This document shows positions 4,898 to 64,000 of a DNA stretch of 64,000 bases, piece after piece. Positions within the stretch are counted from its first letter, which is position 1. Every line of letters begins with the position of its first letter. Source of the stretch: Octopus sinensis (taxonomy: Eukaryota). The notes beneath the pieces are model-generated. The model did no database searches. It was not told the DNA's origin and saw only the letters and a program-made list of their open reading frames with translations. The position numbers were made by a program, and so were the translations under genes. Location of the stretch: NCBI RefSeq assembly GCF_006345805.1, contig NC_043003.1, positions 102,548,001-102,612,000 of the forward strand, in the 5' to 3' direction.

Positions 4898-5368
4898 ATG
4901 CACACACACACACACACACACACACCACACACACACACACACACACACCACACACACACACATACACCACACACACACATAGTGGTGATGAACAACTAAT
5001 CTGGAACTGTAGTGATTCTCAAGAAAGAATGAACACACACATGCACACATAAGCACACACATATGTATATATATATATATATTAATGATTTAGATGTATT
5101 TCTACATTTTCTGATTTTGTATATATACATATATATGCACACATACATAGACATACAACATGTATACATACATACACACAAACATGTATACATACATACA
5201 TACATACATACATACATACATACATACATACATACATACATACATACATGCATACATACATACATACATACATACAAACATACATACACACAAACATGTA
5301 TACATACATACATACATACATACATACAAACATACATACACACAAACATGTATACATACATACATACA

Positions 5369-5805: not shown

Positions 5806-6292
5806 ATCGAAATCGATCAAAAATCAATGGAAATTGTAGTTGTGATACCAGTGGTGGTGGCACGTAAAAGAACCATCCAAACGTGGCCGTTGCCAGCGCC
5901 AGCTCGACTAGCCTCCATGTCAGTGGCACATAAAAAGCATCAACTGATTGTGGCCATTGCTAGCCTCGCCTGGAACCTGTGCTGGTGGCACGTAAAAGAA
6001 CCATCCAAACGTGGCCGTTGCCAGCGCCAGCTCGACTAGCCTCCATGTCAGTGGCACATAAAAAGCATCAACTGATTGTGGCCATTGCTAGCCTCGCCTG
6101 GAACCTGTGCTGGTGGCACGTAAAAGGCACCCACTACACCCACGGAGTGGTTGGCGTTAGGAAGGGCATCCAGCTGTAGAAACACTGCCAGATCAGACCG
6201 GGCCTGGTGCAGCCTCCTGGCTTCCCAGACCCCAGTCGAACCGTCCAACCCATGCTAGCATGGAAAGCAGACGTTAAACGATGATGATGATG
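5806..6292 (+). mobile_element. RTE LINE 3' UTR with internal 128-bp tandem duplication
   Basis: Ends GGAAGGGCATCCAGCTGTAG...CCAACCCATGCTAGCATGGAAAGCAGACGTTAAACG(ATG)n; TGGTGGCACGTAAAAG recurs at 5855, 5983 and 6111. Confidence 0.85.
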
Positions 6293-25597: not shown

Positions 25598-26799
25598 CGT
25601 GTGTGTGTGTTATTTTTTTCTAAATTTCCTCAACTTTATCACAACCTGCTCCATTGAAAACCTACCCCTGCAAAATTACATTAAAACAATGAACTCTGTA
25701 ATTTTCTGAAAGTTATCATTGCCTGCCATCAAACCTTGTATGTGCACTCATCCAGCACCTCTTATGTTAACTTTCTCAGTATCTCTGTTTTACTCTCTCT
25801 GTCTCCCTCCTCTATCTCTAGGATATAAAATGTAGAAATTAACCAACTGATTAATCTGCCAACATTTATATTAGTTGTTGTTTTATCGAGTTGTTTGAAA
25901 TATGATGTATGTATGTAATGGAATATATGTGTTTCTACTAAATATGTATGCGTATGATCATCAATAATTTCAAATGCTATTTCAATCCCACATCTCTTTC
26001 AGTCTTGTGGTGTTAGCAGCTGTGAACTATCACTGATTCTGCCTTGCTCTCCCTTTCATTGCAACCACCTGTAAAGAACTCATAGATTCCTCCTTGCAGC
26101 ACCCACACCTTTTACTGAAACCACCTGTTGATGTCATCTTCTGTTTTGTTCACTGATATTCAGAGGGTGCGTGGTGTGTATATGTTCTTTTGATTGTTAA
26201 TATGTGTGCATTTATATGTGTGTGTAAAAGACAGAAACAGCGAGGAAGAAAAGAAGAGAAAGTGTGTGTATGTGTGGGTAGGTGTGCATGCAGGTGTATA
26301 GGTGAACTAGTGAAAAGCTGTATGGTGTAATGGTGAATGACCAGTGCACAATAGTTTTATTCATGGTTTATATGTTAGTTCAATGCTTCTGTATCGCCAA
26401 TTTGTTTGTGGTTACTCAGGTCTTCATAGAGGTTGAAACCATTGATAGAACAGTTTTTACTTGTAATTTTTTCGTGATATTGATATGAAAAAGAATTAAA
26501 GAGAAAATCTATTTTCTCTGAGCTCAACATTAAAACAGGAAGGGAGTATATGCAAAGAATTACATTGAATTTTCAATACTAACAGTAAGAAATAGAGTTT
26601 AGTACAAAGGAGATTTATTTGTGCATGTATGTGTGTACATACATACACTATTTCTCTCTCTCTCTCACACACTCACACACACGCACACACACACACACGC
26701 ACACACACACACACACATTTATCCCTGGGCTGACCAAAGTGTTGTGAGTGAATTTGATAAACAGAAACTCATATAGACACAAGCTTAAAGAACTGAGTC

Positions 26800-26838
<39 letters not shown>

Positions 26839-26842
<4 letters not shown>

Positions 26843-26973
26843 ATCCAAACATGAAAACACAAAGAGAAAACACAACACGAGGACGTGGAACAAATATAGT
26901 ATTATTGGACGCTCAGGAAGGATGGGAAGAAGGAGGGTTTAATGTTTCGAGCGGAGCTCTTCGTCAGAAACAT
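26839..26973 (-). mobile_element. Family A (TA)n-embedded element with minimal hammerhead-like motif
   Basis: Minus strand 26971-26937: GTTT-CTGACGA-A-GAGC-TCC-GCTC-GAAAC-ATT-AAAC; (TA)n on both sides. Confidence 0.7.
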
Positions 26974-26975
26974 TA

Positions 26976-27017
<42 letters not shown>

Positions 27018-27031
27018 ATATATTATATATA

Positions 27032-27067
<36 letters not shown>

Positions 27068-29711: not shown

Positions 29712-30268
29712 TCATCATCATCATTGTCATTTAACGTCTGCTTTCTATGCTGGCTTGGGTTGGATGGTTTGACTGAGGACTGGCAAGCCAGGAAGTTGTA
29801 CAAGGCTCCAATCTCATTTGGCAAGGTTTCTACAGCTGGATGCCCTTCCTAACACCAACCACTCTGAGAGTGTAGTGGGTGCTTTTTACATGCCATCTGC
29901 ACAGGAGCCATTAGTGGAGGCACATGGCCTAGTGGTTAGAGCAGCGGACTTGCGGTCGAGGGATCGCGAGTTCGAATCTCAGATCGGGCAATGTGTGTAT
30001 GTTTATAAGTGAAACACCTCAGCTCCACGCAACTCCGGCAGAAGGTAATGGTGAAACCTCTGCTGACTCTTCCGCCACAACTTTCTCTCACTCTTTCCTC
30101 CTGCATCTTACAGCTCACCTGCGATGGACTGGCATCCTGTCCAGGTGGGGAACCTATATGCCAAGAAACCGGCCCTTATGAGCCAGGCATGGCTCGAGAA
30201 GGAACAAACAAAAAGGAGCCATTCAGGCAGCACTGGCATCAACCACACTTGAATGGTGCTTTTTACGA
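29712..30268 (-). mobile_element. RTE LINE 3' end, interrupted by a SINE
   Basis: (CAT)n..TTTAACGTCTGCTTTCTATGC..GCTGGATGCCCTTCC; resumes after 30223. Confidence 0.7.
29913..30213 (+). mobile_element. tRNA-derived SINE (OR-like head), tail type 2
   Basis: GTGGAGGCACATGGCCTAGTGG..GAGTTCGAATC; 10-bp TSD AGGAGCCATT at 29903-29912 and 30214-30223; (AAAC)-like tail. Confidence 0.85.
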
Positions 30269-36735: not shown

Positions 36736-36887
36736 AATTCCTCTATTTACATAATATTGAGGTTGCTTTCTTTCTTTTGTTATCTTACCGTTTTTATCAA
36801 TATATATATATATATTATATATATATATATATGTATATAGAGGTGTGTGTGTATAATATATATAGAGGTGTATACATATATATATAT

Positions 36888-36938
<51 letters not shown>

Positions 36939-36939
<1 letters not shown>

Positions 36940-37352
36940 CTGTTATTGTGGTCATAAAGGCTGAACATAGCGATTTAAAAATATCTGGATTTCTAAAAGT
37001 TGCCACATCTTTTGTCTACAAAATTTGTAATGAGCTAGAGACTGAAGATAGAAATGTATCACCAATATCAAAGCATAAAAAGCATTCTAAACACTCTGAA
37101 ATCATCAGAACACCTGAATTTATCCAGCAAGTTCAACAGATCATTTATTACAATCTCAGAAAGTCCATGAAGTCATTTGCAAAAGATTTCCATATGCCGG
37201 AAGGAACAGTCAGAAATGCTGTCCACAAAAACATCAGATATAAGTCTTATATGATGAAGAAAGGTCAATTTGTCAGAAAAATCAAAAGAAAAAATCACTA
37301 CGTCAGGTCTAAAAGGCTCTTAAACAAACTGAAAAATCCAGCAGAAGAAGAG
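36939..37352 (+). mobile_element. Tc1/mariner (maT/DD37D-like) transposase N-terminal fragment
   Basis: ..FLKVATSFVYKI..KKHSKHSEIIRTPEFIQQVQ..KSMKSFAKDFHMPEGTVRNAVHKNIRYKSY..KRLLNKLK: double-HTH pattern; stops before the catalytic D. Confidence 0.8.
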
Positions 37353-37797
37353 GATGTCACTTGCATACTCTATAGAATCTCTCACAAAAATATCAAGGAA
37401 GCCATACTCATATCACAACATAATAGCGAAATAAATGCACAAACTACACAAATATAAAAATATTAATATATGGTTACTGGCATAAAAAACCTAATGAACA
37501 ATGACCACAGACAAAATTATCAGGTGATTACTGACAAAGAAACCTAACAGTCTATAAAACCTTTGGTAGAAAAGTATTCAAGAATTTGACTTGCTTCAAA
37601 AATGGCAAAATATCAGAATTCACCATTCCTGAAAGGGATCAGGGGTGAGTTGTCTCACCCGTCTGTGACATTCAGGTGTTTTAACACCTTGCACTCTGAG
37701 GGAGCTACCCTCACCATGCTAAATTGCACTGTATCAGCAAACAAGTAAAACATATATACATTGAGTACATGCAGTCAATAATGTTTATATATATATA

Positions 37798-38391: not shown

Positions 38392-39267
38392 AATTACAGA
38401 CCAATAACCTGTCTCCCTACAATTCACAAAGCCTTTACTGCAATATTATCGCAGAGATCGAGCAAGCATCTGGAAGAAAACAACCTGTTTCCAGAAGAGC
38501 AGAAGGGATGCTGCAAGGGCTCATATGGCTGTAAAGATCAACTAATGATCAATAAAGCCATAACTGAAGACAACTGCAGAAAGAAGAAAGGCCTAAGTAT
38601 AACTTGGATCGACTACCAAAAGGCTTTTAATAGCATCCCCCACAGATGGATCCTAGAAACACTAGCCATAAACAAGGTAGCACCAATAATCATAACATAT
38701 ATAACACATTCCATAAATAAATGGCCAAGAGTGCTACAGCTCCAGACAAAAGAGGGACTCATAAAAACCAAAGCCATCTCCATTAGAAGAGGAATATTCC
38801 AGGGAGAAATGTTACGGCAAAACAATCAGCCACCTCTTATATATGGATGACCTAAAACTGTACGCTACAAATGGTAAACAGCTGGAAACACTACTACTGA
38901 CAGTACATGGATTTACCAAAGAAATAAATATGAAATTTGGCTTAGAAAAATGTGCCAAAGCAACCTTGGAAAGAGCAAAACTAGTTAAGAGTAGCAACAT
39001 CACACTAGATAAAGCCAATGAAATAAGAGAATTAGACCAAAGCCAGACATACAAATATTTAGGAATCAATGAACTAGATATGATACAACACACACAAATG
39101 AAGGAGAAAATAAAGAATACTACAGATGAGTTAGATCAATACTGAAAATAGAGCTCAATGCTAAAAACAAGACAATAGGTATCAATACTCTAGCCATCTC
39201 AGTTATAAGTTACAGCTACAATATCCTTAACTGGACACTAAACGAACTAACCAAAATAGACAGGAAA
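38392..39267 (+). pseudogene. R4/Dong-clade LINE reverse transcriptase fragment
   Basis: NYRPITCLPT..EEQKGC..GCKDQL..WIDYQKAFNSIPH.W..RRGIFQG / HLLYMDDLKLY..MKFGLEKC..YKYLGI; frameshifts and an internal deletion after FQG. Confidence 0.9.
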
Positions 39268-40280
39268 TTGTATGTGTCTTCATTTGCACATGCGTATACC
39301 TCCATGTGTGTTTACGTTTAGTTAGTGTGTGTGAGTTAAAATATTTGACCTCAAATATCCATCAGTTTAGATTGAGGTTAACTCCAATGAAACAGACCTA
39401 TGATTAAAGGCTTTTCAGATATAACTATACCTAACTTTTTTTTTCAAATACAGTGTACCTAGGATTGCATAACTGTGTTATTCTATTTCTAAGATGTTAG
39501 GGAATAATTCAAGGACAATTTTGGTTGCTATCCTAAAAGAAGCACGTTAAGAAAGCAAAAACCCAAAGAAAAGTTTGAGAAGACTAAGAAGATTATGAAG
39601 AAGAAAAAATAGAGAAAAAAACCTATAAAGAGAAAAAAGTTTTTAAAAATCTACAACTAAAACAATATTAAAAACTAATCTGCATACTGCCTTAGCTGCT
39701 AGACTATCCACCCACTCTGAAAAAATATCCATAAGCAGAAGATATATAGTAATATTTAGTAATTATAGATAACATTATTTGTAATAACTACCTATAATCT
39801 TCAAGGAAGTTCCATTTTCTGTTCTGCTCTTACTAAGTATTTCTGATTGCTATCTCACTATATTTTGGTTCCAACACTGAAGTCCAAGCAGACTGGTCGT
39901 ATTTCTTACGATGGTGCAAACACTATTGCTTCATCTTCTCTCATATTATTTATCCTTTGTGTCTGCTACTGATTATTGCCGAGGGAGTTTTCTTAATATG
40001 ATGTTGGCCTAACAGCATTGTAGAAATCAAAGATAGATTGTGATGCACCAAGTACAAACTACAATAAATTAAATATAAACCATAATAAGCCAAAGAAAGG
40101 CCACTCATGTGTCAAAGATAGACACCCTTTCTTTTTACCTTGCTTGAAAACCTATTTGACAAATCTGAAGCTTTAACAATCTCAACATAATAGAAACTGT
40201 TATAAATGGTGGTTTTGTTGGTCAGTTTCTTGGGTCACACTTTTACATTTGTGGAGAGAAAGAGTAAATATAAGAGGAGC

Positions 40281-41351: not shown

Positions 41352-41815
41352 CATCATCATCATCATCGTTTAACATCCGCTTTCCATGCTAGCATGGGTT
41401 GGATGGTTCAACTGGGGTCTGGGAAGCCAGGAGGCTGCACCAGGCTCTAGTCTGATCTGGCAGTGTTTCTACAGCTGGATGCCCTTCCTAACGCCAACCA
41501 CTCCATGAGTGTAGTGGGTGCTTTTTACATGCCACTGGCACAGGTGCCAAGTGAGGCTGGCAATGGCCATGATCGGTTGGTGCTTTTTTACGTGCCACCA
41601 GCATGGAGGCCAGTTAAGGTGGCACTGGCAATGGCCACATTCAGATGGTTCTTTTACATGCCACCAGCACTGGTATCACAACTACAATTTCCATTGATTT
41701 TTGATCGATTTCGATTTCACTTGCCTCAACAGGTCTTTGCAAGCAGAGTTTTGTGTCCCAAGAAGGAAAGGTATGCATAAGTGGACTGGCTACATCCCAG
41801 GTAAAGGCCACAGGT
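41352..41815 (-). mobile_element. RTE LINE 3' UTR
   Basis: Reverse-complement match to 5806-6292 and 48606-48962. Confidence 0.85.
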
Positions 41816-45020: not shown

Positions 45021-45923
45021 ATCTCCATAGAAAGAGAGAAAGAAAGGTAGGGAAGAGAGAGGGGAGAGGGGAACAATAGGCAAACTACTCACCAAAATGG
45101 CCTTTATGGGAAAAAAAAATCTACTCATAAACACATCTCTTTAACTATAATGAAAATGCAGACTAAAATCTTGTAAAACGTTTGATTAAATATGCACATA
45201 CACTTATAAAACCACATATATATACATAGAAAATAGGAGCAAGAATGTATTTGTTAAAAGGTAAACACAGTAACACACTTCCTCTCTTGTTCTTGTCTCC
45301 TCTCTCCCTCTCCTACTTTCTCCCTCTCTCTCTTCTTTATTGTCTTGCTCTTTCCCTATCTCTCTCTCTTCTTCCCCTTCTCTCTTCCTCTGTTTCTCTC
45401 CCTCTTTCTCCTCCCTTCTTTTCTTTTCTCCTCTCTCCTATCTCAATCTCTCTTCTTTCTCTTCCCATTCCTCTCTCACCTCTCTCTTTTCCTCCATCTC
45501 TCTCTACCCTCCGTTTCTCTCTCTCTCTCTCTTTCTCTCTCCCCCTCTCTCTTCCTTTCTTTGTTTCTGCAACGAAAATCAAATGTAATGAAGCAGAGAA
45601 AAGTGGAAATTCCTTTATTGTCATGACAGAAATCTATCTATAAGGTGATAATCTGAAAATAAGCTAATCTCTCTGTATTTCTGTTGTAATCAATAATTAG
45701 CTATTGTCAGCTCATAGAGGTAAATCTGTGCCCATCACACACACACACACACACTCTCTCTCTCTCTCACTCTCACTCTCTCTTTGCAACACTGAAGCAC
45801 ACACAGTCATTAGCTTTCTGTGCTATTAAATTCAGGAGGTTTAACAGAGATGTGTTGGGCAGGTAACAGGCAAGTTGGTAGAAGCCGTTAGCGATACTCT
45901 GACAATGAGTGCTGCTGCTGCTG

Positions 45924-46278
45924 TTACTGTTGAGCGAACGGTCTTCGTCCCAGAGCTCGCAAGATGGGAGAAGTCCAAAACGTGGTCCTTTGCTATTCGT
46001 AAGACCCGCAGAAGAGAGAGCAAGTCAAGCTCCGACACCGAAAGCATCGACGGATGGATGAATCCACATCCAGGCTCAGCGGTTGCGTAGGAAGTCGGGG
46101 ACAAGAAACAGGAAGAAAGAGTGAGAGAAAGTTGGAGTGAAAGAGTACAACAGGGGCCGCCACCACCCCCTGCTGGAGCCTGGTGGAGCTTTAGGTGTTT
46201 TCGCTCAATAAACACACACAACGCCCGGTCTGGGAATCGAAACCGCGATCCTCCGACTGCGAGTCCATTGCCCTGACC
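45924..46278 (-). mobile_element. tRNA-derived SINE (OR-like head), tail type 3
   Basis: Reverse-complement homolog of 63508-63879; flanked by (GCT)n on both sides. Confidence 0.85.
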
Positions 46279-46605
46279 ATTGGGCCATTGCGCCTCCACT
46301 ACCGCTGCTGCTGCTGATGATGATGATGGCGATCATCATCATGAAGATGGTGATAATGATGAGGATGATGGCAATAAGTAACTACAATCAACAATTTTCG
46401 TGCAAACCAATGTTAATTTACCAAAGATGTTGGCAACAGACAATATTTTGTTTTGTTTTGTTTTGTTTTTTCCAGAGCTCTAGACTAGATATGTTAGGTT
46501 TTTGTCTGGTTTGGTCTGGTCTGCATAATTTGTCATCATAGTTAATTCTATGGCTGGAAGAGATGTTTAAGAATAGCGTGGTGACAAACTTTTTTTTGAA
46601 TGCAG

Positions 46606-49097: not shown

Positions 49098-49434
49098 TGG
49101 TTTATCTGGTATTTGTTGGGAGGTAATCATCTAGGGATCGTTTGAATGCCGTGAAGTCCCTTTCCCCCTTTATGTGTGTCTGGCACGATGTCGAAGAGAG
49201 CAGGGCCAATTGAGGTGAAATAGTTCTGTCATAGTGTTGTGATATGACATGAACATTTCTGTAGTGGACGGAAGGCACGGGGGCCAAGCCTCAAATGAAT
49301 TTTAAAGACGGGCAATGTTGATCGAATATTTTCCACATCATACAGAAGATACAGAGCTCACAGCAGCGGTGAAGGGAGCAAAGCCTGAGCTTTTTGAGTC
49401 GATCCCAATAGTCAAGGCTTGTCATGTCATCCTC
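49098..49434 (-). pseudogene. CR1-group LINE ORF2 C-terminal fragment
   Basis: MTSLDYWDRLKKLRLCSLHRCCE..MMWKI / NYFTSIGPALFDIVP / FKRSLDDYL / QIPDKP: typical invertebrate CR1 end; frameshifted. Confidence 0.8.
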
Positions 49435-49821
49435 CGCAGACCTCCGCCAAGCACCTCATTTTAAGATAGATACGTGAGTAAAATTACTAATAGAGAAACG
49501 AAAATAAACTTTAGAATCAGCAACACCACCATAGGTTACGTGGAAACGATGAACGCGTTTTCAAGGGAGATAATCAAAGAACATAACTTTGTAGTACTTC
49601 ATGTAAAGTAGATATAACAAATGAAAAATCCTTCAAGAATCCTTAAAAATTCCCGAATCACTACCAAAATTTCATCATCTGTTCCTTGTGTCATTACCAA
49701 CTTTTCCTGCAAGTTTCATCAAATACCGTTAACAACGTTTTGAGTTTTTTGCACACAGACGGACAGACGGACAAATCAACGCCATTGGAAGCATAACCTC
49801 TTTCCTTGGCGGAGATAATAA
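49435..49821 (-). mobile_element. Helentron-associated non-autonomous element (HINE/DINE-1-like)
   Basis: Minus strand begins TTATTATCTCCGCCAAGGAAAGAGGTTATG, then GTCCGTCTGTCCGTCTGT microsatellite; subterminal inverted repeat CTCCGCCAAG (49442-49451) / CTTGGCGGAG (49805-49814); ends CTTGGCGGAGGTCTGCG. Confidence 0.65.
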
Positions 49822-50705: not shown

Positions 50706-51366
50706 TGTCATCAACCCTGACTCTACAGCTGGCTGTCCATTTCATAACATATCCATCACCTCACTTCCTGATTCTTCAACGATATCTCAGACTCAATTAT
50801 TTTATCATCATAATCTAAAATATATTTTGAAACCTCTTCTTGTGTAGTTTAGACTTAACCACTTACCATTTTAGTCTGCCATTCAAATATAAAGATGGTT
50901 TACCCATTGCATTGTAAAAATTATTAACTCACTTCAAACATCTTATTACAATTCCATATATATTTACAAGTATATTTACTAATTAAGTTGTCAGAGTCTG
51001 TTCTTATTGATCTGAGCAGATTAAGAGGAGCATAGCTCAGAAAAATGTCCCCAATGACAGACTATGAAGACCTAAAATCTCAATGGCTGAAATGGCAGGA
51101 GATGCCAAAATCAGAAGCAATTTCTATGAAAACATAGCTCAAGCAATGTGAATGCTGATGACAGGCAGTTGCCATTTTATTGCCTGGCCCTGCATGTCAT
51201 ATTTTGCATATGCTGTAGAGGATGTTTTTGAGACCACACAGTCCATGGTGGGGGTAATTTCCTGACAAGTTGGGATCCACCCTAATCAAAACCGCACACT
51301 ATCAGCATTTCTTCATTGATCACTGAACGGCAACTATAGAGTGGTTGTTGTAAGGTGAACAATATG

Positions 51367-51661
51367 GGTTAAAGAACTTTTTTGGTCATGAATGACTATG
51401 GGAAAGTTCCCCTCCGAGGCACAAGTCTGGCAAGGTTGTTTTATGGAAGACCAGCAGTCACCCATGCATACCAGCCTCCCCTCTTCATGCCACCGGTGTT
51501 ATCCAAGGGAAAGGTAAAGGCCAATACTGAGCGATCTGGAGCAATGTGCGATAAAGTGTCTTGCTCAAGAAGACAACACACAGCCAGGCCTAGGAATCGA
51601 ACTCACAACCTCATGATTGTGAGCCTGATGCTCTAACCATTGAGCCATGTGCCTTCACAAC
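51367..51661 (-). mobile_element. tRNA-derived SINE, same family as 59307-59651, without 5S head
   Basis: Minus strand GAAGGCACATGGCTCAATGGTTAGAGC..GAGTTCGATTCC; 12-bp TSD GTGAACAATATG at 51355-51366 and 51662-51673. Confidence 0.85.
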
Positions 51662-52398
51662 GTGAACAATATGATGCAGAGAACCAAATAATTCTAGTAG
51701 AGTAGTTGCTTGATGATGAACATTCTTACACAAGTGGTTGTTGTAGGGTGAACATTCTTACATAGTGAACTGAACAGCTATGTTATAGAGAACTAGTGAA
51801 TTAAATACTTGATTCAAAGTGAACAGAACAATTGTTTTAGTGAACCAAACAGTTAAATATTCCACTGATAAGTTAATGTCAATTCATAAACTGACATTAA
51901 ATTTTCTGCCTTCTAATTTGATTTTCATATTCTACTTCTCCATAAATTTGCTGTGTGACATTGTAACTGCATCACGGTCAATCCATTGCCACCACCAACA
52001 CCACACCGACATTATTATCACTATAACTGCTACTTGTACCACAGTAATAGTAACAACAACAACAGCAGCAGCATCACCACCACTACCACCACCACCACCA
52101 CCACCACCCCTACCACCATTGCCACTGTTATTACAACAGTTCATTTCTCATATGTCTAAGAAGATTAGAAGTGATTAGGGCTAGCATATTTGGCTGACTT
52201 CTAAAGCCATTGCCTCACATTTAATTCTCCTTGCCTGCCTCCTCTCATTATCAAACCAATTTACTGATATCTATACTCTTACATACAACTGGTAAAAACT
52301 TCATCTGAAACCAACCAGTGTCAAACCTAAGAAGCTGAAAGCCATCTTGAATAAGCCTGCTCTCTCTTTCTCTCTCTCTCTCTCACACACACACACAC

Positions 52399-55460: not shown

Positions 55461-55926
55461 AGTGCCAGTGACACTTAAAAGGCACCATTTGAGCATGATC
55501 GTTAGCAGCGTCGCCTTACTGGCACTTGTGCCCATGCTAGTAGGGTGCCTAGAGCACCATCCGAGTGTGATCATTGCCAGAGCAGCCAACTGGTTTCTGT
55601 GCCAGTGGCATGCAAAAGGGCACCATTCGAGCATGATCGTTACCAATATCACCTTACTGGCACCTGTGCTGGTGGCATGTGTAAAAGAATTCGAGCGAGG
55701 TCATTGCCAGTACTGCCTGACTGACCCCATGCCAGTGGCACATAAAAAGCACTCACTACACTCTCGGAGTGGTTGGCGTTAGGAAGGGCATCCAGCTGTA
55801 TAAATTCTGCCAGATCAAGATTGGAGCCTGGTACAGCCATCTGGTTTGCCAGCCCTCAATCAAAATCGTCCAACCCATGCTAGCATGGAAAGCGGACGTT
55901 AAACGATGATGATGGTGATGATGATG
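55461..55926 (+). mobile_element. RTE LINE 3' UTR, variant with diverged internal repeats
   Basis: Repeated TGCCAGTGGCA..AAAAG..CACC units, then the common tail and (GAT)n. Confidence 0.85.
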
Positions 55927-57531: not shown

Positions 57532-57827
57532 GTAAGCAAATTAATTCTATACGCAAACAAGTTGGTAACAAACACCTACATTTCTCCACACTTTTCTCTT
57601 GTCATTCTCTCCCGCACCCCATCCTGAAACAAAGCAAACAGCCTTACTTGATGGAAACAACCAAAATATTGAATCTAAATGTTAAACAGCCAATTTGTCA
57701 AATTTAAGTGCCACCAACTCAAATATTAAGTTAACATCCATGCCATATCTTGCCAAACGTTAATTTTAATCTTTGAGTCAATGAAGGAACCTCCTGGGTA
57801 GTCGTTTGATTAGCTAGAAATAGCAGC

Positions 57828-58021
57828 CATCATCATCATCATCATCATCGTTTAATGCCCGTTTTCCATGCTAGCACGGGCTGGACGGTTCGACCAGGGT
57901 CTGGGAAGCCAGAAGGCTGCACCAGGCTCCAGTCTGATCTAGCAGTGTTTCTACAGCTGGATGCCCTTCCTAATGCCAACCACTCCGAGAATGTAGTGGG
58001 TACTTTTTACATGCCACCAGC
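57828..58021 (-). mobile_element. RTE LINE 3' end
   Basis: (CAT)n-CGTTTAATGCCCGTTTTCCATGCTAGC...GCTGGATGCCCTTCC. Confidence 0.8.
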
Positions 58022-59037
58022 ACGATCTCCCTTAAATTATACCTGGCAATCTTAAAGAAAACTGAAGTATACACAATGAGATCTTGGGACATGTCTGAAG
58101 TGGAAAAAGAAACAACATGGTGTGGTCATGGTTGGAGCATTATAGTGTTATCCTGGAGCTAAACAATAGCTGCAGTAGTTAACATATATTTTCTATCTTA
58201 ATGTAGATTCAACACTGCATTTGTCCTTATATTTTAATCTTTCAAGTCCGAAACCACTTCTGAATTAATTTTTTCCTTTTACCATTTATTCCAACATAGA
58301 TATTTGCCAACACCAATTCCTATTCTACTCAGGGTACATCATCCACCCACAATATATACACATTAGTAGAGTCATCTTTCCTGTATATATTTATATACCC
58401 TTTTGATACTCTGTTGCTTTCTTCACTTGCATTTAATTCCTCAATATTTTCCACAAAGAATATGTTCTCAAATAAAAAACCATATTCTTTGTGGAAAATA
58501 GCGATTTGACGTCTATATCTAGCATGTTGACCGTCCACTTTTAATTGTCAGTCCTTTAAATTTTGTATATATATATATACACACACACACACACAAATAT
58601 ATATATATATATAATTTGCATCTGTTTGCTGCTTATGCTGACAAAAATATGCAATATGGTAGCTTTCCAAACATCTAATCCAGTGTCACCTCAAGTTTTT
58701 AAGTCCAAGGTTTGTACATCTAGTCTGGTGCATTGCTAATCAGAGATACCCCTTAATGTTGATTTCACCAGAACCTGCAAGGGCCATGACCACAGCCCTT
58801 CCTCCATACCAACCCAGTGATATCATCCACATCACTGTGAACCTTTTCTTTGTAAAAGTATAGTAAACACACACACTGGCTTCTGTCCACCAAATCCACT
58901 CCCAAGGTCTGGGTTTGGCCTAGGGCTGTTGTAGAAATCATTATGGGAAGTGAACTACTCAACTACACAACCATAAATGCCAATATTAATATGGGATGTG
59001 GAGTGAGCCAGTATCTAGATGACAATTGTATTTACAG

Positions 59038-59121: not shown

Positions 59122-59179
59122 GTATTTTGGTTTCTATACTCTATCCTTTTTCTTCAAATGTAAGTTATGCACATATCAT

Positions 59180-59298
59180 TTATATACCATATCACGTTAA
59201 AAGCACCGGTTCTCGTCTGATCACCGAAGTTAAGCAACGTCGAGCCTAGTCAGTACTTAGATGGGTGACCGCATGGGAAACCTAGGTGCAGTAAGCAT
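59180..59298 (+). pseudogene. 5S rRNA retro-copy / 5S-derived head
   Basis: ACCATATCACGTTAAAAGCACCGGTTCTCGTCTGATCACCGAAGTTAAGCAACGTCGAGCCTAGTCAGTACTTAGATGGGTGACCGCATGGGAAACCTAGGTGCAGTAAGCAT is clearly 5S; 5' end degraded, single copy, no T-run terminator. Confidence 0.92.
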
Positions 59299-59306
59299 AG
59301 CACATT

Positions 59307-59651
59307 GTTGAAGGCACATGGCTCAGTGGTTAGAGCGTCGAGCTTACGATCGTGAGGTTGTGAGCTCGAATCCCGGTCCGGGCTGCGTGTTGTGTTCTTG
59401 AGCAAAGCACTTTATTTCACGTTGCTCCAGTTCACTCAGCTGTAGAAATGAGTTGCGACGTCACAGGTGCCAAGCTGTATCAACCTTTGTCTTTCCCTTG
59501 GATAACACTGGTGGCATGGAGAGGGGAGGCTGGTATGCATGGGCGACTGCTGGTCTTCCATAAACAACCTTGCCCGGACTTGTGTCTAGGAGGGTAACTT
59601 TCTAGGTGCAATTCCATGGTCATTCATGACCGAAGGGGGTCTTTACCCTTA
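59307..59651 (+). mobile_element. tRNA-derived SINE fused 3' of the 5S copy
   Basis: A-box TGGCTCAGTGG, B-box-like GCTCGAATC; body homologous to 51367-51661. Confidence 0.85.
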
Positions 59652-60680
59652 CACATATCATATTGCATCAATTACACAATGGTCATTGCTAACTATGTGC
59701 ATGATTTCATGCCTTTCTTCTACGAATAAGAACAGAGATAATGATAGTTGGTGATGATGATGATGATGATGATGATGATGACGACGATGACGATGATGAT
59801 GACAACGACAACAACATCAACATTGTTGATAACGGTAACTACAATGATACTTTGCTATTGTTTGCACATAAAAATCTAAGTTTTTCGCTTTAGTTATCAA
59901 TGAGGATGAGTATGTTAGTGGTGGTTTTGGAGGTGCAAGCAGTGTCTGTTGGTGTCGGTGGCGGTAGGGATAGTAGTGGTGGTGGTGGTGGTAGAGGATA
60001 ACCTGAACTAATTATGTGAAGTTAGGAACACTGGAAGTGTACAAGGGAATCAATCCACTTTAAAATGAACAATTCCACAATATTTTTTATCAGTTTAAAG
60101 TTTTATTGAAGAAGGATCAACTTGAAAGAGAACCAATTTCCTGAAGTTAATTGTTAATTTTGTGAACAAACAAGTAAAGCTAAAATGAAATTTAACAAAT
60201 CTGTAGGGACATCACATTAATTAAAAGTGCATATTTCATCATTAACTTAAAAGTGGCACTGTTATTAGCAGCAGCTTTCAGGCCACATTCTGTGCTAATT
60301 AAATAATCAGAACAAATTTATTATCATTACATTCACTGTCAGTTCTTATTTTGGTTGGGTGGTGATAAGATTTCAGATTTCAGGGTGAATTGTGTTATGT
60401 ATTTTAATTTGGTTATGGTGATGACCTCCAGTAAATAGGTGTGAGAAGCAAGCAGGGCCCTAGTGAATGGGTCAACATTCAACATGTTCCTGTTAGCAAA
60501 GGAATGCAGGTGGGAGAGAATACATGATGTTTGGCAGTAAAAGTAATCGTGGATTTGTGGAATGTCCTGATTGTCCCCAGCTCTATGTATCCTCCACACC
60601 ACCCTATAAGGATGTTTCATTTTATTTCCTTTAACATCGTTGCTCTTCCTACCTGTACTTTTTTTTACTTAATTCTATGT

Positions 60681-61967: not shown

Positions 61968-62522
61968 ATTATTATTATTATTGAGTGAGAGAGCAGTGCA
62001 TACTATCAAAGTGACACTGGGGTAAAATATACAAAGCCAAGTATACCCATTATGAGTACCCGTCTGATAAGGGTACACCAGGTACATACATTATAATCAT
62101 ATGTGCACAACATGGTGATTTAATATCAAGATAAACAACACATGATCTTACAAGTGGGGATTGAATTTGAATTTTCTTCAGGTCAAGTAGCCCTTCCCAC
62201 TCAAATGGTCCCTGAATAAGGGTTGCTTAAGGATGTTGAATGAAACACCCATGTTTCCAAAGGTGAATTATTCAAACCCCAAAGAATTCCTCTCAACACA
62301 TGGCAATGATGCTCCCCAACTACTTCTGCTTGTGATCAGGGATGCACATATCATCAGCCATCAAGGGAAATGCTCAACTGGTTAAGGTCAAACAACTGAC
62401 AAGCAAATCTGTGGTACTGAGCAGAAAATTTACTGTAGCCCATCTTTTATACCAAGACAAAACAATGTACATGATAACACTTCCAATCAGTTAAGATCAG
62501 AAGCCATGAGAGCCACTGCATG
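61968..62522 (-). mobile_element. Unclassified (TAA)n-tailed interspersed repeat, copy 2
   Basis: About 540 bp, homologous to 9655-10103. Confidence 0.7.
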
Positions 62523-63507: not shown

Positions 63508-63879
63508 GTGGAAGCGCAATGGCCCAGTGATTAGGGCAGCGAACTCGCAGTCGGAGGATTGTGGTTTTGATTCCCAGACCGGGCGTTGTGTGTGTTTATT
63601 GAGCGAAAACACCTAAAGCTCCACGAGGCTCCGGCAGGGTGTGGTGGCGATCCCTGTTGTACTCTTTTGCACCACTCTTTCTTCCTGTTTCTTGTCCCCG
63701 ACTTCCTACGCAACCACTAAGCCTGGATGCGCATTCATCCATCCGTCAATGCTCTCGGTGTCAGGGGTTGACCTGCTTTCTTTTCTGCGGGTCTTACGAA
63801 TAGCAAAGGACCATGTTTCGGACTTCTCCCAGAGGATGAAGACCGCTTCGTTCAACAAACAAACAAACAAACAAAACAA
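63508..63879 (+). mobile_element. tRNA-derived SINE (OR-like head), tail type 3
   Basis: 13-bp TSD ACCAGCATCAGTG at 63495-63507 and 63880-63892; (AAAC)n tail. Confidence 0.88.
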
Positions 63880-64000
63880 ACCAGCATCAGTGAAGCCACC
63901 AATTAACTTGCAAGACAAGGAAATAAAAGGAAAATACTTCTCGACTGAGTGGAGGTGTATATGAGAGACAAAGGAATTGGCTTTATACTACGTGTTAAAA

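What the first reader, a model, noticed from the sequence alone, without database searches (positions are those of the whole stretch)
59170..59661. 5S rRNA-tRNA-SINE chimera apparently retrotransposed as one unit
Seen: near-full-length 5S (59180-59298), an 8-nt linker AGCACATT, then a complete tRNA-SINE (59307-59651). The same 10-mer CACATATCAT flanks the whole unit (59170-59179 and 59652-59661). There is no run of four T anywhere in the unit, so Pol III starting in 5S would read through about 470 nt. The same SINE occurs without 5S at 51367-51661. Known: 5S+tRNA composite heads exist in a few SINEs (for example AmnSINE1), and chimeric retrogenes arise by template switching. Inference: either an undescribed cephalopod composite SINE with two Pol III promoters or a one-off template-switch product, that is, a SINE family caught at birth. 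Caveats: box C reads TACTTAGATGG (A at 59259 where G is usual), the 5S 5' region shares CATATCA microhomology with the target, and a 5-6-bp CACAT match in the linker allows a two-step insertion model.
Basis: partly seen in the sequence, partly recalled or inferred. Interest (0 to 1): 0.85.

Follow-up and report, generated by a model that had tools for sequence, protein, structure and literature searches.

The report
Octopus 5S copy fused to SINE
A retro-copied 5S ribosomal RNA sequence sits head-to-tail with a complete octopus tRNA-type SINE inside a single 10-bp target-site duplication; such fusions are how new 5S-headed SINE families arise, but I could not search an octopus genome to tell a family member from a one-off or from two hits at the same spot.

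Summary
Rfam finds one 5S rRNA match in the window (59178-59297, 89.5 bits against a cut-off of 38). An 8-nt spacer and a full-length tRNA(Arg)-like CORE-type SINE (59307-59651) follow it. The exact 10-mer CACATATCAT flanks the pair (chance about 4e-4), and the unit contains no TTTT. The host is an Octopus species.

- **Spacer:** it contains GCACAT, which is the base before the duplication plus its first five bases (chance 0.2-0.6%). This is what two successive insertions at one nick would leave, with 5S first.
- **5' end:** the unit begins at 5S position 2. Positions 2-8 (TTATATA) are not 5S-like, while positions 9-120 are canonical. This suggests the template was a Pol III transcript of an already retro-copied 5S locus, not mature 5S rRNA.
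- **Age:** both halves keep their CpGs in a CpG-poor genome, so both are young.

My ranking:
- Retrocopy of a pre-existing 5S-SINE co-transcript, about 0.4.
- Two-step insertion, about 0.3.
- Fresh template switch, about 0.2.

The decisive copy-number test could not be run, because no cephalopod genome was searchable. Fusions of this kind are known in vertebrates and insects, so interest is moderate.

The parts
59170..59179 (+). Left copy of the target-site duplication, CACATATCAT. The preceding base, G at 59169, also recurs in the spacer.
   Evidence: Chance of a flanking repeat of 10 nt or more is about 3.5e-4.
59180..59186 (+). TTATATA, which occupies 5S positions 2-8 but is not 5S-like. 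Helix I cannot form with it.
   Evidence: Rfam marks non-canonical pairs in helix I. The minimum-energy fold leaves the 5' end unpaired. Position mapping n = 59178 + n is.
59187..59298 (+). 5S rRNA-derived segment, positions 9-120. The internal promoter looks intact: box A AGTTAAGCAACGTCG (59228-59242), intermediate element CCTAGT (59245-59250), box C TAGATGGGTGACCGCATG (59258-59275). There is no T-run terminator at its 3' end.
   Evidence: Rfam RF00001, 89.5 bits, full model. Motifs were read. CpG observed/expected is 1.05.
59299..59306 (+). Spacer AGCACATT. GCACAT at 59300-59305 equals G59169 plus the first 5 nt of the target-site duplication. The same hexamer also occurs in the SINE head at 59314-59319.
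   Evidence: Positional null probability is 0.56% for 5 nt and 0.21% with the preceding base.
59307..59651 (+). Full-length tRNA-like CORE-type SINE. It has box A TGGCTCAGTGG (59319-59329), box B-like AGCTCGAATCC (59363-59373), an anticodon-loop-like CTTACGA (Arg-like), a CORE-like stretch at about 59395-59450, and a 3' palindrome GGTCATTCATGACC (59618-59631).
   Evidence: Alignment with the copies at 51367-51661 and L005:19781-20070. The 18-nt CCATGGTCATTCATGACC (59614-59631), which contains the 3' palindrome, recurs in copy 2 with one mismatch. CORE similarity is about 5 SD above the shuffle mean. 10 of 12 inferable CpG sites are kept.
59652..59661 (+). Right copy of the target-site duplication, CACATATCAT.
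51367..51661 (-). Older copy of the same SINE with no 5S, flanked by its own 12-bp duplication GTGAACAATATG (51355-51366 and 51662-51673). In SINE orientation its duplication begins CATAT, close to the CACAT of the unit.
   Evidence: Its head gives a sub-threshold Rfam tRNA match of 28.1 bits.

Best explanation
One LINE-mediated, target-primed reverse transcription event inserted a single RNA of about 472 nt. The RNA ran from a 5S-type head, through an 8-nt spacer, to the 3' tail of a full-length tRNA(Arg)-like CORE-SINE. The event produced the 10-bp duplication CACATATCAT.

The RNA was most likely not made by a fresh jump onto mature 5S rRNA. It was more likely a Pol III read-through transcript of an already existing 5S-spacer-SINE locus. 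In that locus the 5S internal promoter (box A, intermediate element, box C) sets the start about 50 nt upstream whatever the sequence there, the 5S terminator is gone, and the SINE's 3' hairpin tail recruits the partner LINE. On this reading the unit is at least a second-generation copy of a composite 5S/tRNA SINE, and the spacer is a relic of how the progenitor was built.

Shown: the anatomy, the duplication, the youth of both halves, and the absence of terminators. Inferred: single-event insertion, Pol III origin of the template, and the existence of further copies. Taking all 'one unit' models together I give about 0.6. For this specific version I give about 0.4.
For: - A 10-bp duplication flanks the whole unit (chance about 3.5e-4).
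- The two parts share one orientation, the SINE is complete to the 5' end defined by copy 2, and the 5S is complete to position 120.
- The unit starts at 5S position 2, yet positions 2-8 are TTATATA while positions 9-120 are canonical with intact promoter boxes. A distance-measured Pol III start on a 5S-derived locus predicts exactly this. Kojima 2024 describes the same pattern for SINE3 families: conserved promoter, diverged upstream part (PMC10886601).
- There is no TTTT in 492 nt, and the 5S terminator is replaced by GCATAG.
- Both halves are young. CpG observed/expected is 1.05 for the 5S part and 0.63 for the SINE, against 0.29 for the window. The SINE keeps 10 of 12 inferable CpG sites, against 2 of 11 in each of the other two copies.
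- There is precedent. HaSE3 and the 5S+tRNA heads of Deu-SINEs are explained by a SINE-to-5S template switch (PMC3272025; PMC4824008; PMC4758252). The giant squid genome has about 24,000 5S-derived loci, thought likely to be SINEs (PMC6962438).
Against: - No second copy of the junction was seen. The 109 kb of other Octopus DNA I could fetch has no 5S at all, and its one further full-length SINE copy has no 5S upstream. Copy 2 in the window also lacks 5S.
- GCACAT in the spacer matches this locus's own target. Under this model that needs either an endonuclease preference for CAYAT targets, which rests on only two duplications, or a coincidence of 0.2-0.6%.
- Retro-copied 5S promoters are thought to be weak without their upstream elements (discussion in PMC3272025).
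- The SINE's box B is slightly degenerate (AGCTCGAATCC).
Confidence: 0.4

Rival explanations
1. Two successive insertions at the same target. A tailless 5S retrocopy went in first, with the duplication (G)CACATATCAT. A SINE was later primed at the same bottom-strand nick in the right-hand duplicate, with a top-strand cut only 5 nt away. That gave the SINE its own 5-bp duplication CACAT plus one filler T. The right-hand 10-mer is regenerated automatically, so the pair looks like a single unit.
For: - It explains the spacer with no coincidence. GCACAT at 59300-59305 equals G59169 plus the first 5 nt of the duplication, sits 1 nt from the SINE start, and has a null probability of 0.21-0.56%.
- Both the outer duplication and that of copy 2 begin CAYAT, which hints at a preferred and therefore reusable nick site.
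- The reverse order, SINE first, can be rejected. It would need ATCAT to recur by chance, about 1 in 1024 (read).
Against: - It needs a 5S retrocopy with no LINE-type tail and no A-tail. The SINE's conserved 3' hairpin points to a partner LINE that recognises a specific tail and would not pick up bare 5S RNA.
- It needs a second hit at the same phosphodiester bond within a short time, since both halves still keep their CpGs.
- It does not explain why 5S positions 2-8 are non-5S yet of the right length.
- A 5-bp repeat flanking the SINE alone is not rare under a looser test, about 5.7% with 3 nt of slack at each end.
Confidence: 0.3
2. A one-off chimeric retrocopy. During target-primed reverse transcription of a SINE RNA, the LINE reverse transcriptase reached the SINE's 5' end, added a few untemplated bases, jumped to the 3' end of a 5S rRNA, copied it, and the whole cDNA was integrated. 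The product is dead on arrival.
For: - It shows the classical signature of such chimeras: two RNA-derived parts in the same orientation, the small RNA on the 5' side, and one duplication around both.
- The SINE is complete to its 5' end and the 5S to its 3' end, as expected for an end-to-end jump.
- 5S/LINE-1 and U6/LINE-1 chimeras are documented in human (bioRxiv 10.1101/2025.02.02.635956; PMC2104539 and PMC6789731 listed).
Against: - It needs two separate coincidences. The 8-nt filler would have to contain the target's GCACAT (0.2-0.6%). A 7-nt non-5S stretch would have to replace exactly 5S positions 2-8.
- An 8-nt filler is long for template jumps.
- Human 5S/L1 chimeras are mostly antisense and truncated, unlike this one.
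Confidence: 0.2
3. An assembly artefact or chance juxtaposition: a mis-join at short CACAT-type repeats, or unrelated neighbouring fragments whose flanking 10-mers match by accident.
For: - The region is rich in CA/TA microsatellite-like sequence.
- CACATATCAT occurs four times in the window.
- Read-level support could not be examined.
Against: - The flanking 10-mer sits exactly at the independently defined element ends, with a chance of about 3.5e-4.
- The flanks are otherwise unique sequence.
- Both elements are full-length and collinear.
Confidence: 0.05

Closest known systems
HaSE3 of Helicoverpa armigera and related lepidopteran SINE3 families
   Same: A 5S rRNA-derived head with box A, intermediate element and box C is joined to the body and tail of a resident tRNA-derived SINE. 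The origin is attributed to a template switch from SINE RNA to 5S rRNA (PMC3272025). In these families the part upstream of the promoter diverges while the promoter is conserved (PMC10886601).
   Different: In HaSE3 the 5S head replaces the tRNA head. Here the complete tRNA head with its A and B boxes is retained behind a full-length 5S. HaSE3 is a demonstrated multi-copy family, whereas only one copy is known here.
AmnSINE1 and other 5S-headed Deu-SINEs of vertebrates (Nishihara et al. 2006)
   Same: The head is composite, with 5S sequence fused 5' of a tRNA-derived region, and the 5S promoter takes over (as summarised in PMC4758252, and PMC4824008).
   Different: Those elements keep only part of the tRNA region and carry the Deu domain. 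This one keeps the whole tRNA-like head, and its body is CORE-like. Those elements are ancient and vertebrate; this one is young and from an octopus.
Chimeric retrogenes made by LINE reverse-transcriptase template switching (5S/L1, U6/L1; Buzdin et al. 2003)
   Same: A small Pol III RNA lies 5' of a retroelement 3' part, and one target-site duplication surrounds both.
   Different: Human 5S/L1 chimeras are usually antisense and truncated at position 46 or 90. Here the 5S is in sense orientation and runs to position 120, the 3' partner is a complete SINE, and the junction carries an 8-nt target-like spacer.
Octopus CORE-SINEs OR1/OR2 (Ohshima and Okada 1994)
   Same: The SINE half has a tRNA-like head with an Arg-type anticodon loop (CTTACGA) and a CORE-like central stretch. 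It occurs in O. sinensis as well. Two papers cite OR1 or OR2 as the octopus CORE-SINE.
   Different: I had no OR1 or OR2 consensus to align, so identity with either family is a recollection and not a test. Neither has been described with a 5S head.

Membership tests
5S rRNA (Rfam RF00001), sequence family | Covariance-model score at or above the gathering threshold over the full model. | tested here: met
   89.5 bits against 38, model positions 1-120, E = 6.9e-18.
Functional 5S rRNA gene | Helix I pairing between the 5' and 3' ends, a T-run terminator, and the usual tandem-array context. | tested here: not met
   Helix I pairs are marked non-canonical and positions 2-8 read TTATATA. There is no TTTT until 59880. 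It is the only 5S in 64 kb.
tRNA-derived SINE (SINE2) | Internal A and B boxes, several dispersed copies with different target-site duplications, and length under 500 bp. | tested here: met
   Box A is TGGCTCAGTGG and box B-like is AGCTCGAATCC. Three copies were found, at 59307-59651, 51367-51661 and L005:19781-20070 in O. sinensis, two of them with distinct duplications.
tRNA-derived SINE (SINE2) | A 3' tail shared with a partner LINE. | tested here: inconclusive
   The 3' palindrome region is conserved in both window copies, but no LINE with it was found in the window or in 109 kb of other Octopus DNA. The one reverse-transcriptase fragment in the window (38392-39318) shows no similarity to the tail.
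CORE-SINE superfamily | The roughly 60-bp CORE domain downstream of the tRNA-related head. | tested here: inconclusive
No curated CORE reference was available.
5S-headed SINE family (SINE3, including composite 5S+tRNA heads) | A 5S-derived head that retains box A, the intermediate element and box C. | tested here: met
   AGTTAAGCAACGTCG, CCTAGT and TAGATGGGTGACCGCATG lie at 5S positions 50-64, 67-72 and 80-97.
5S-headed SINE family (SINE3, including composite 5S+tRNA heads) | Multiple genomic copies that share the 5S-body junction and have different target-site duplications. | not testable with these tools
   No cephalopod DNA is present in the metagenome, viral or prokaryote-genome collections. 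Protein-route searches with the junction ORF and with a six-frame query found no related sequence: no candidate and one unrelated protein. There is no 5S in the 109 kb of Octopus DNA fetched.
5S-headed SINE family (SINE3, including composite 5S+tRNA heads) | Transcription by Pol III from the 5S promoter through to the tail. | not testable with these tools
   Only permissive evidence exists: no T4 terminator in the unit.
AmnSINE1 / Deu-SINE | The Deu domain in the body. | not tested
   No Deu reference was available. The body aligns with CORE-like sequence instead, so I do not file it here.
Template-switch chimeric retrogene (Buzdin type) | Two RNA-derived parts in the same orientation enclosed by a single target-site duplication. 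| tested here: met
Template-switch chimeric retrogene (Buzdin type) | A direct fusion at the junction, with no target-derived sequence between the parts, and a bona fide cellular RNA as the 5' part. | tested here: inconclusive
   The 8-nt spacer contains the target's GCACAT, and 5S positions 2-8 are not 5S.

The most novel reading that the evidence does not exclude
Octopus genomes carry an undescribed, recently active SINE family. Its transcription unit would start at a complete 5S-type (type 1) promoter, read through a complete tRNA-type (type 2) SINE head and CORE body, and end in the SINE's LINE-recognised tail. It would be the first 5S-headed SINE reported from a mollusc, and an intermediate stage in which the old tRNA head has not yet been lost.
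Probability: 0.35. Interest if true: 0.55.

Novelty: new member of a known kind. Interest (0 to 1): 0.4.

Why it matters
New SINE families are thought to arise when a LINE reverse transcriptase joins an existing SINE to another Pol III RNA, but the early intermediates are rarely seen. The known 5S-headed families have already lost part or all of the tRNA head. A young octopus element with both promoters intact would show that intermediate stage. It would also extend 5S-headed SINEs to molluscs, and it could help explain the very large numbers of 5S-like loci reported in cephalopod genomes.

If it proves to be two hits at one nick, it documents target-site reuse by an octopus LINE endonuclease. 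It would then also be a warning that a shared flanking duplication does not by itself prove a single insertion.

Tried and rejected
**Searches for more copies**
- I searched for proteins related to the junction-spanning ORF (59250-59405, minus strand), hoping to find ORFs called on other copies. There were no candidates.
- I repeated this with a six-frame translation of the whole unit. It returned one unrelated protein.
- I looked up two window ORFs next to the unit, hoping to retrieve the same locus from other assemblies. Neither is on record.
- I scanned the metagenome collection for a generic 5S box C-to-tRNA box A composite pattern. It gave nothing.
- I scanned the viral, prokaryote-genome and metagenome collections for a conserved 20-mer of the SINE. 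Only chance matches of 21-25 nt in GC-rich bacterial contigs came back.

**Other Octopus DNA**
- I fetched 109 kb through homologues of a mariner-like ORF. It holds one more full-length SINE copy, no 5S and no junction.

**Host gene, orthologous locus and partner LINE**
I ran no further search on a concatenated-ORF query.
- I searched for the partner LINE through the 3' palindrome. It was not found.
- I looked for a target-site duplication around the O. sinensis copy. None is clear.

**Models rejected or discounted**
- SINE first, then 5S: rejected, because it needs a 1-in-1024 recurrence of ATCAT.
- Microhomology joining through CATATCA: rejected, because both copies of the heptamer are retained.
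- Twin priming: rejected, because the two parts are in the same orientation.
- The second ATGCACATATCAT at 62342: a 13-nt chance match, with no similarity in the flanks.

Full report
**What is there**

Rfam finds exactly one family above threshold in the 64-kb window. It is 5S rRNA at 59178-59297 on the + strand, covering the full model, at 89.5 bits against a gathering score of 38. A permissive rescan adds no other 5S. ARAGORN finds no tRNA gene.

Read directly, the locus is:

...GTTATG | CACATATCAT | TTATATA-CCATATCACG...(5S)...GTAAGCAT | AGCACATT | GTTGAAGGCACATGGCTCAGTGG...(SINE)...TCTTTACCCTTA | CACATATCAT | ATTGC...

- The element at 59307-59651 is a SINE. A second copy lies at 51367-51661 on the minus strand. 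It is 84% identical over aligned columns, has two internal deletions, and carries its own 12-bp duplication GTGAACAATATG.
- A third copy lies in O. sinensis DNA at L005:19781-20070.
- The 5' end of the SINE (GTTG[TG]AAGGCAC) is defined by copy 2, so the copy in the unit is full-length.
- The SINE has a consensus box A (TGGCTCAGTGG), a near-consensus box B (AGCTCGAATCC) and an Arg-like anticodon loop.
- A central stretch aligns collinearly with the CORE region of a MIR consensus. The score is about 5 SD above shuffles.
- A 3' palindrome, GGTCATTCATGACC, is conserved in both window copies.
- Homologues of a mariner-like ORF elsewhere in the window come from O. bimaculoides and O. sinensis, so the host is an Octopus species.

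**Is it more than chance?**

When a 472-nt unit is placed at random in the window with 3 nt of slack at each boundary, a flanking direct repeat of 10 nt or more appears in 7 of 20,000 trials. The flanks are otherwise unique sequence. The unit has no TTTT; the nearest are at 59146 and 59880.

**Three details that bear on mechanism**

1. The spacer. AGCACATT contains GCACAT. This equals the base before the left duplication (G59169) plus the first five bases of the duplication, and it ends 1 nt before the SINE. I took random pairs of window positions as a null. A 5-nt prefix of the duplication lies within 0-2 nt of the junction in 0.56% of trials, and in 0.21% when the preceding base must also match. 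I note that the same hexamer also occurs in the SINE head (GGCACATGG, 59314-59319).

2. The 5' end. With 5S position n at 59178 + n, the insert starts at position 2. Positions 9-120 are canonical and the internal promoter is intact: box A AGTTAAGCAACGTCG, intermediate element CCTAGT, box C TAGATGGGTGACCGCATG. Positions 2-8 read TTATATA and cannot pair with the well-preserved 3' strand of helix I. With the rest this well conserved, so many changes confined to positions 2-8 are not credible as decay after insertion. Either a 7-nt filler happens to have the right length, or the template RNA already carried these bases.

3. Age. The window is strongly CpG-depleted, with observed/expected of 0.29. 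The 5S part has 1.05 and the SINE 0.63. The SINE keeps 10 of 12 inferable CpG sites, against 2 of 11 in each of the other two copies. Both halves are young and about equally fresh, and all three target-like motifs are still identical.

**Models**

(a) One event, fresh template switch onto mature 5S rRNA. This is the best-precedented route. It is invoked for HaSE3 (PMC3272025), for the 5S+tRNA heads of Deu-SINEs, and for human 5S/L1 and U6/L1 chimeras. It explains the shared duplication, the common orientation and the end-to-end junction. It has to treat both detail 1 and detail 2 as coincidences.

(b) Two events at one nick. A tailless 5S copy inserts with the duplication (G)CACATATCAT. A SINE is then primed at the same bottom-strand nick in the right-hand duplicate, with a 5-nt stagger. 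This reproduces the observed string exactly, including the intact right-hand 10-mer. The reverse order would need ATCAT to recur by chance, so it can be dropped. The costs are three:
- A bare 5S RNA must be reverse-transcribed with no tail, although the SINE's conserved 3' hairpin suggests a tail-specific partner LINE.
- The same bond must be hit twice within a short time.
- Detail 2 remains unexplained.

(c) One event, with a template that was a Pol III co-transcript of an existing 5S-spacer-SINE locus. The 5S internal control region fixes the start at a set distance. A progenitor with a truncated 5S would therefore give transcripts that begin with local non-5S bases at the right position, which is detail 2. 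Loss of the 5S terminator allows read-through. The SINE tail provides mobilisation. The spacer would then be a relic of the progenitor's construction. Its resemblance to the present target would reflect an endonuclease preference: the duplications of this unit and of copy 2 both begin CAYAT, but that is only two data points. SINE3 families show the same pattern of a conserved promoter and a diverged upstream part (PMC10886601). Cephalopod genomes can hold very many 5S-like loci, about 24,000 in the giant squid (PMC6962438).

**Weighing**

My rough likelihoods make (b) and (c) similar and (a) clearly lower. If a family exists, its copies would outnumber rare double hits, and that tips the prior toward (c). 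All of these inputs are soft.
- (c) about 0.4
- (b) about 0.3
- (a) about 0.2
- artefact or other, about 0.05-0.1

'Inserted as one unit', that is (a) plus (c), comes to about 0.6.

**What could not be done**

The decisive test is counting junction copies in an Octopus genome, and it was out of reach.
- The DNA collections hold no cephalopod sequence.
- Protein-route searches with the junction ORF and with a six-frame query found no related sequence: no candidate and one unrelated protein.
- ORFs next to the unit are not on record.
- The 109 kb of other Octopus DNA I could fetch contains no 5S. Its one further full-length SINE copy has no 5S.

This does not constrain a family of up to a few tens of thousands of copies. 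It shows only that most copies of this SINE lack the 5S head.

**Comparison with what is known**

In architecture the unit is closest to the composite 5S+tRNA heads of AmnSINE1-type elements and to HaSE3. It differs in three ways:
- It keeps a full-length 5S and a full tRNA-like head with both promoter types.
- Its body is CORE-like and not Deu.
- Its host is a mollusc, a group for which a 2024 review lists no 5S-derived SINE (PMC10946416).

It is not a functional 5S gene: helix I is broken, there is no terminator, and it is not in an array. Membership of a 5S-headed SINE family fails only on the untestable criterion of copy number.

**Verdict**

The structure is real and young. It is of a known kind, a 5S/SINE fusion made by LINE machinery. 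The single-unit reading is the more likely one but is not secured. Interest is moderate, at 0.4, and would rise if a genome search shows a family.

Noticed in passing
window 29912-30213 (+), with duplications at 29903-29911 and 30214-30222: A different tRNA-headed SINE (head GGCACATGGCCTAGTGGTTAGAGC) ends in an A-rich tail (GAACAAACAAAAA) and has a 9-bp duplication GGAGCCATT. It is nested in another interspersed repeat. The A-rich tail suggests that a second, poly(A)-type LINE machinery has also been active in this genome.
   Followed up: partly
window 36738-37454 (+): A remnant of a mariner/Tc1-like transposase ORF, preceded by a (TA/TG) microsatellite. Its closest homologues are 'uncharacterized' proteins of O. 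bimaculoides and O. sinensis at 61-72% identity. Some ENA homologues carry helix-turn-helix domains PF13384 and PF01498. This hit is what identified the genus.
   Followed up: partly
window 38392-39318 (+) and 49105-49455 (-): A LINE reverse-transcriptase fragment split over overlapping frames (Pfam RVT_1, E = 9e-10 and 6e-8), and, by eye, a CR1-like LINE C-terminal remnant (…LDYWDRLKKLRL…, …FKRSLDDYL…). Neither shares the SINE's 3' tail.
   Followed up: partly
window 59752-59802, and many (TG/TA)n tracts such as 5114-5365 and 26616-27064: Microsatellites give sub-threshold Rfam matches to mir-598, mir-297, mir-466 and others. The giant squid genome paper reports 172 mir-598 loci, and that count may include matches of this kind.
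   Followed up: no
window 6051-6254, 41451-41777, 55652-55855, 57810-58052; also 45844-46332 and 63617-63961: Two further abundant interspersed repeat families are recognisable from recurring pseudo-peptides (…LDALPNANHS…VVGAFYVP… and …SSCFLSPTSYAT…LRVLRIAKDHV…). About 26% of the window matches another part of itself.
   Followed up: no
L008 and L009 (ENA sample ERZ21867824, contigs of 72 and 149 kb): Contigs deposited as a metagenome assembly carry mariner-like ORFs related to the octopus one, and prokaryote-style ORF calls. They have neither the SINE nor a 5S. They are probably host (mollusc) DNA from another species in a metagenome.
   Followed up: no
window 62342-62354: A second occurrence of the 13-mer ATGCACATATCAT, which is the target site plus three upstream bases, lies inside an unrelated repeat. 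No similarity extends beyond the 13 nt, so it is probably chance.
   Followed up: yes
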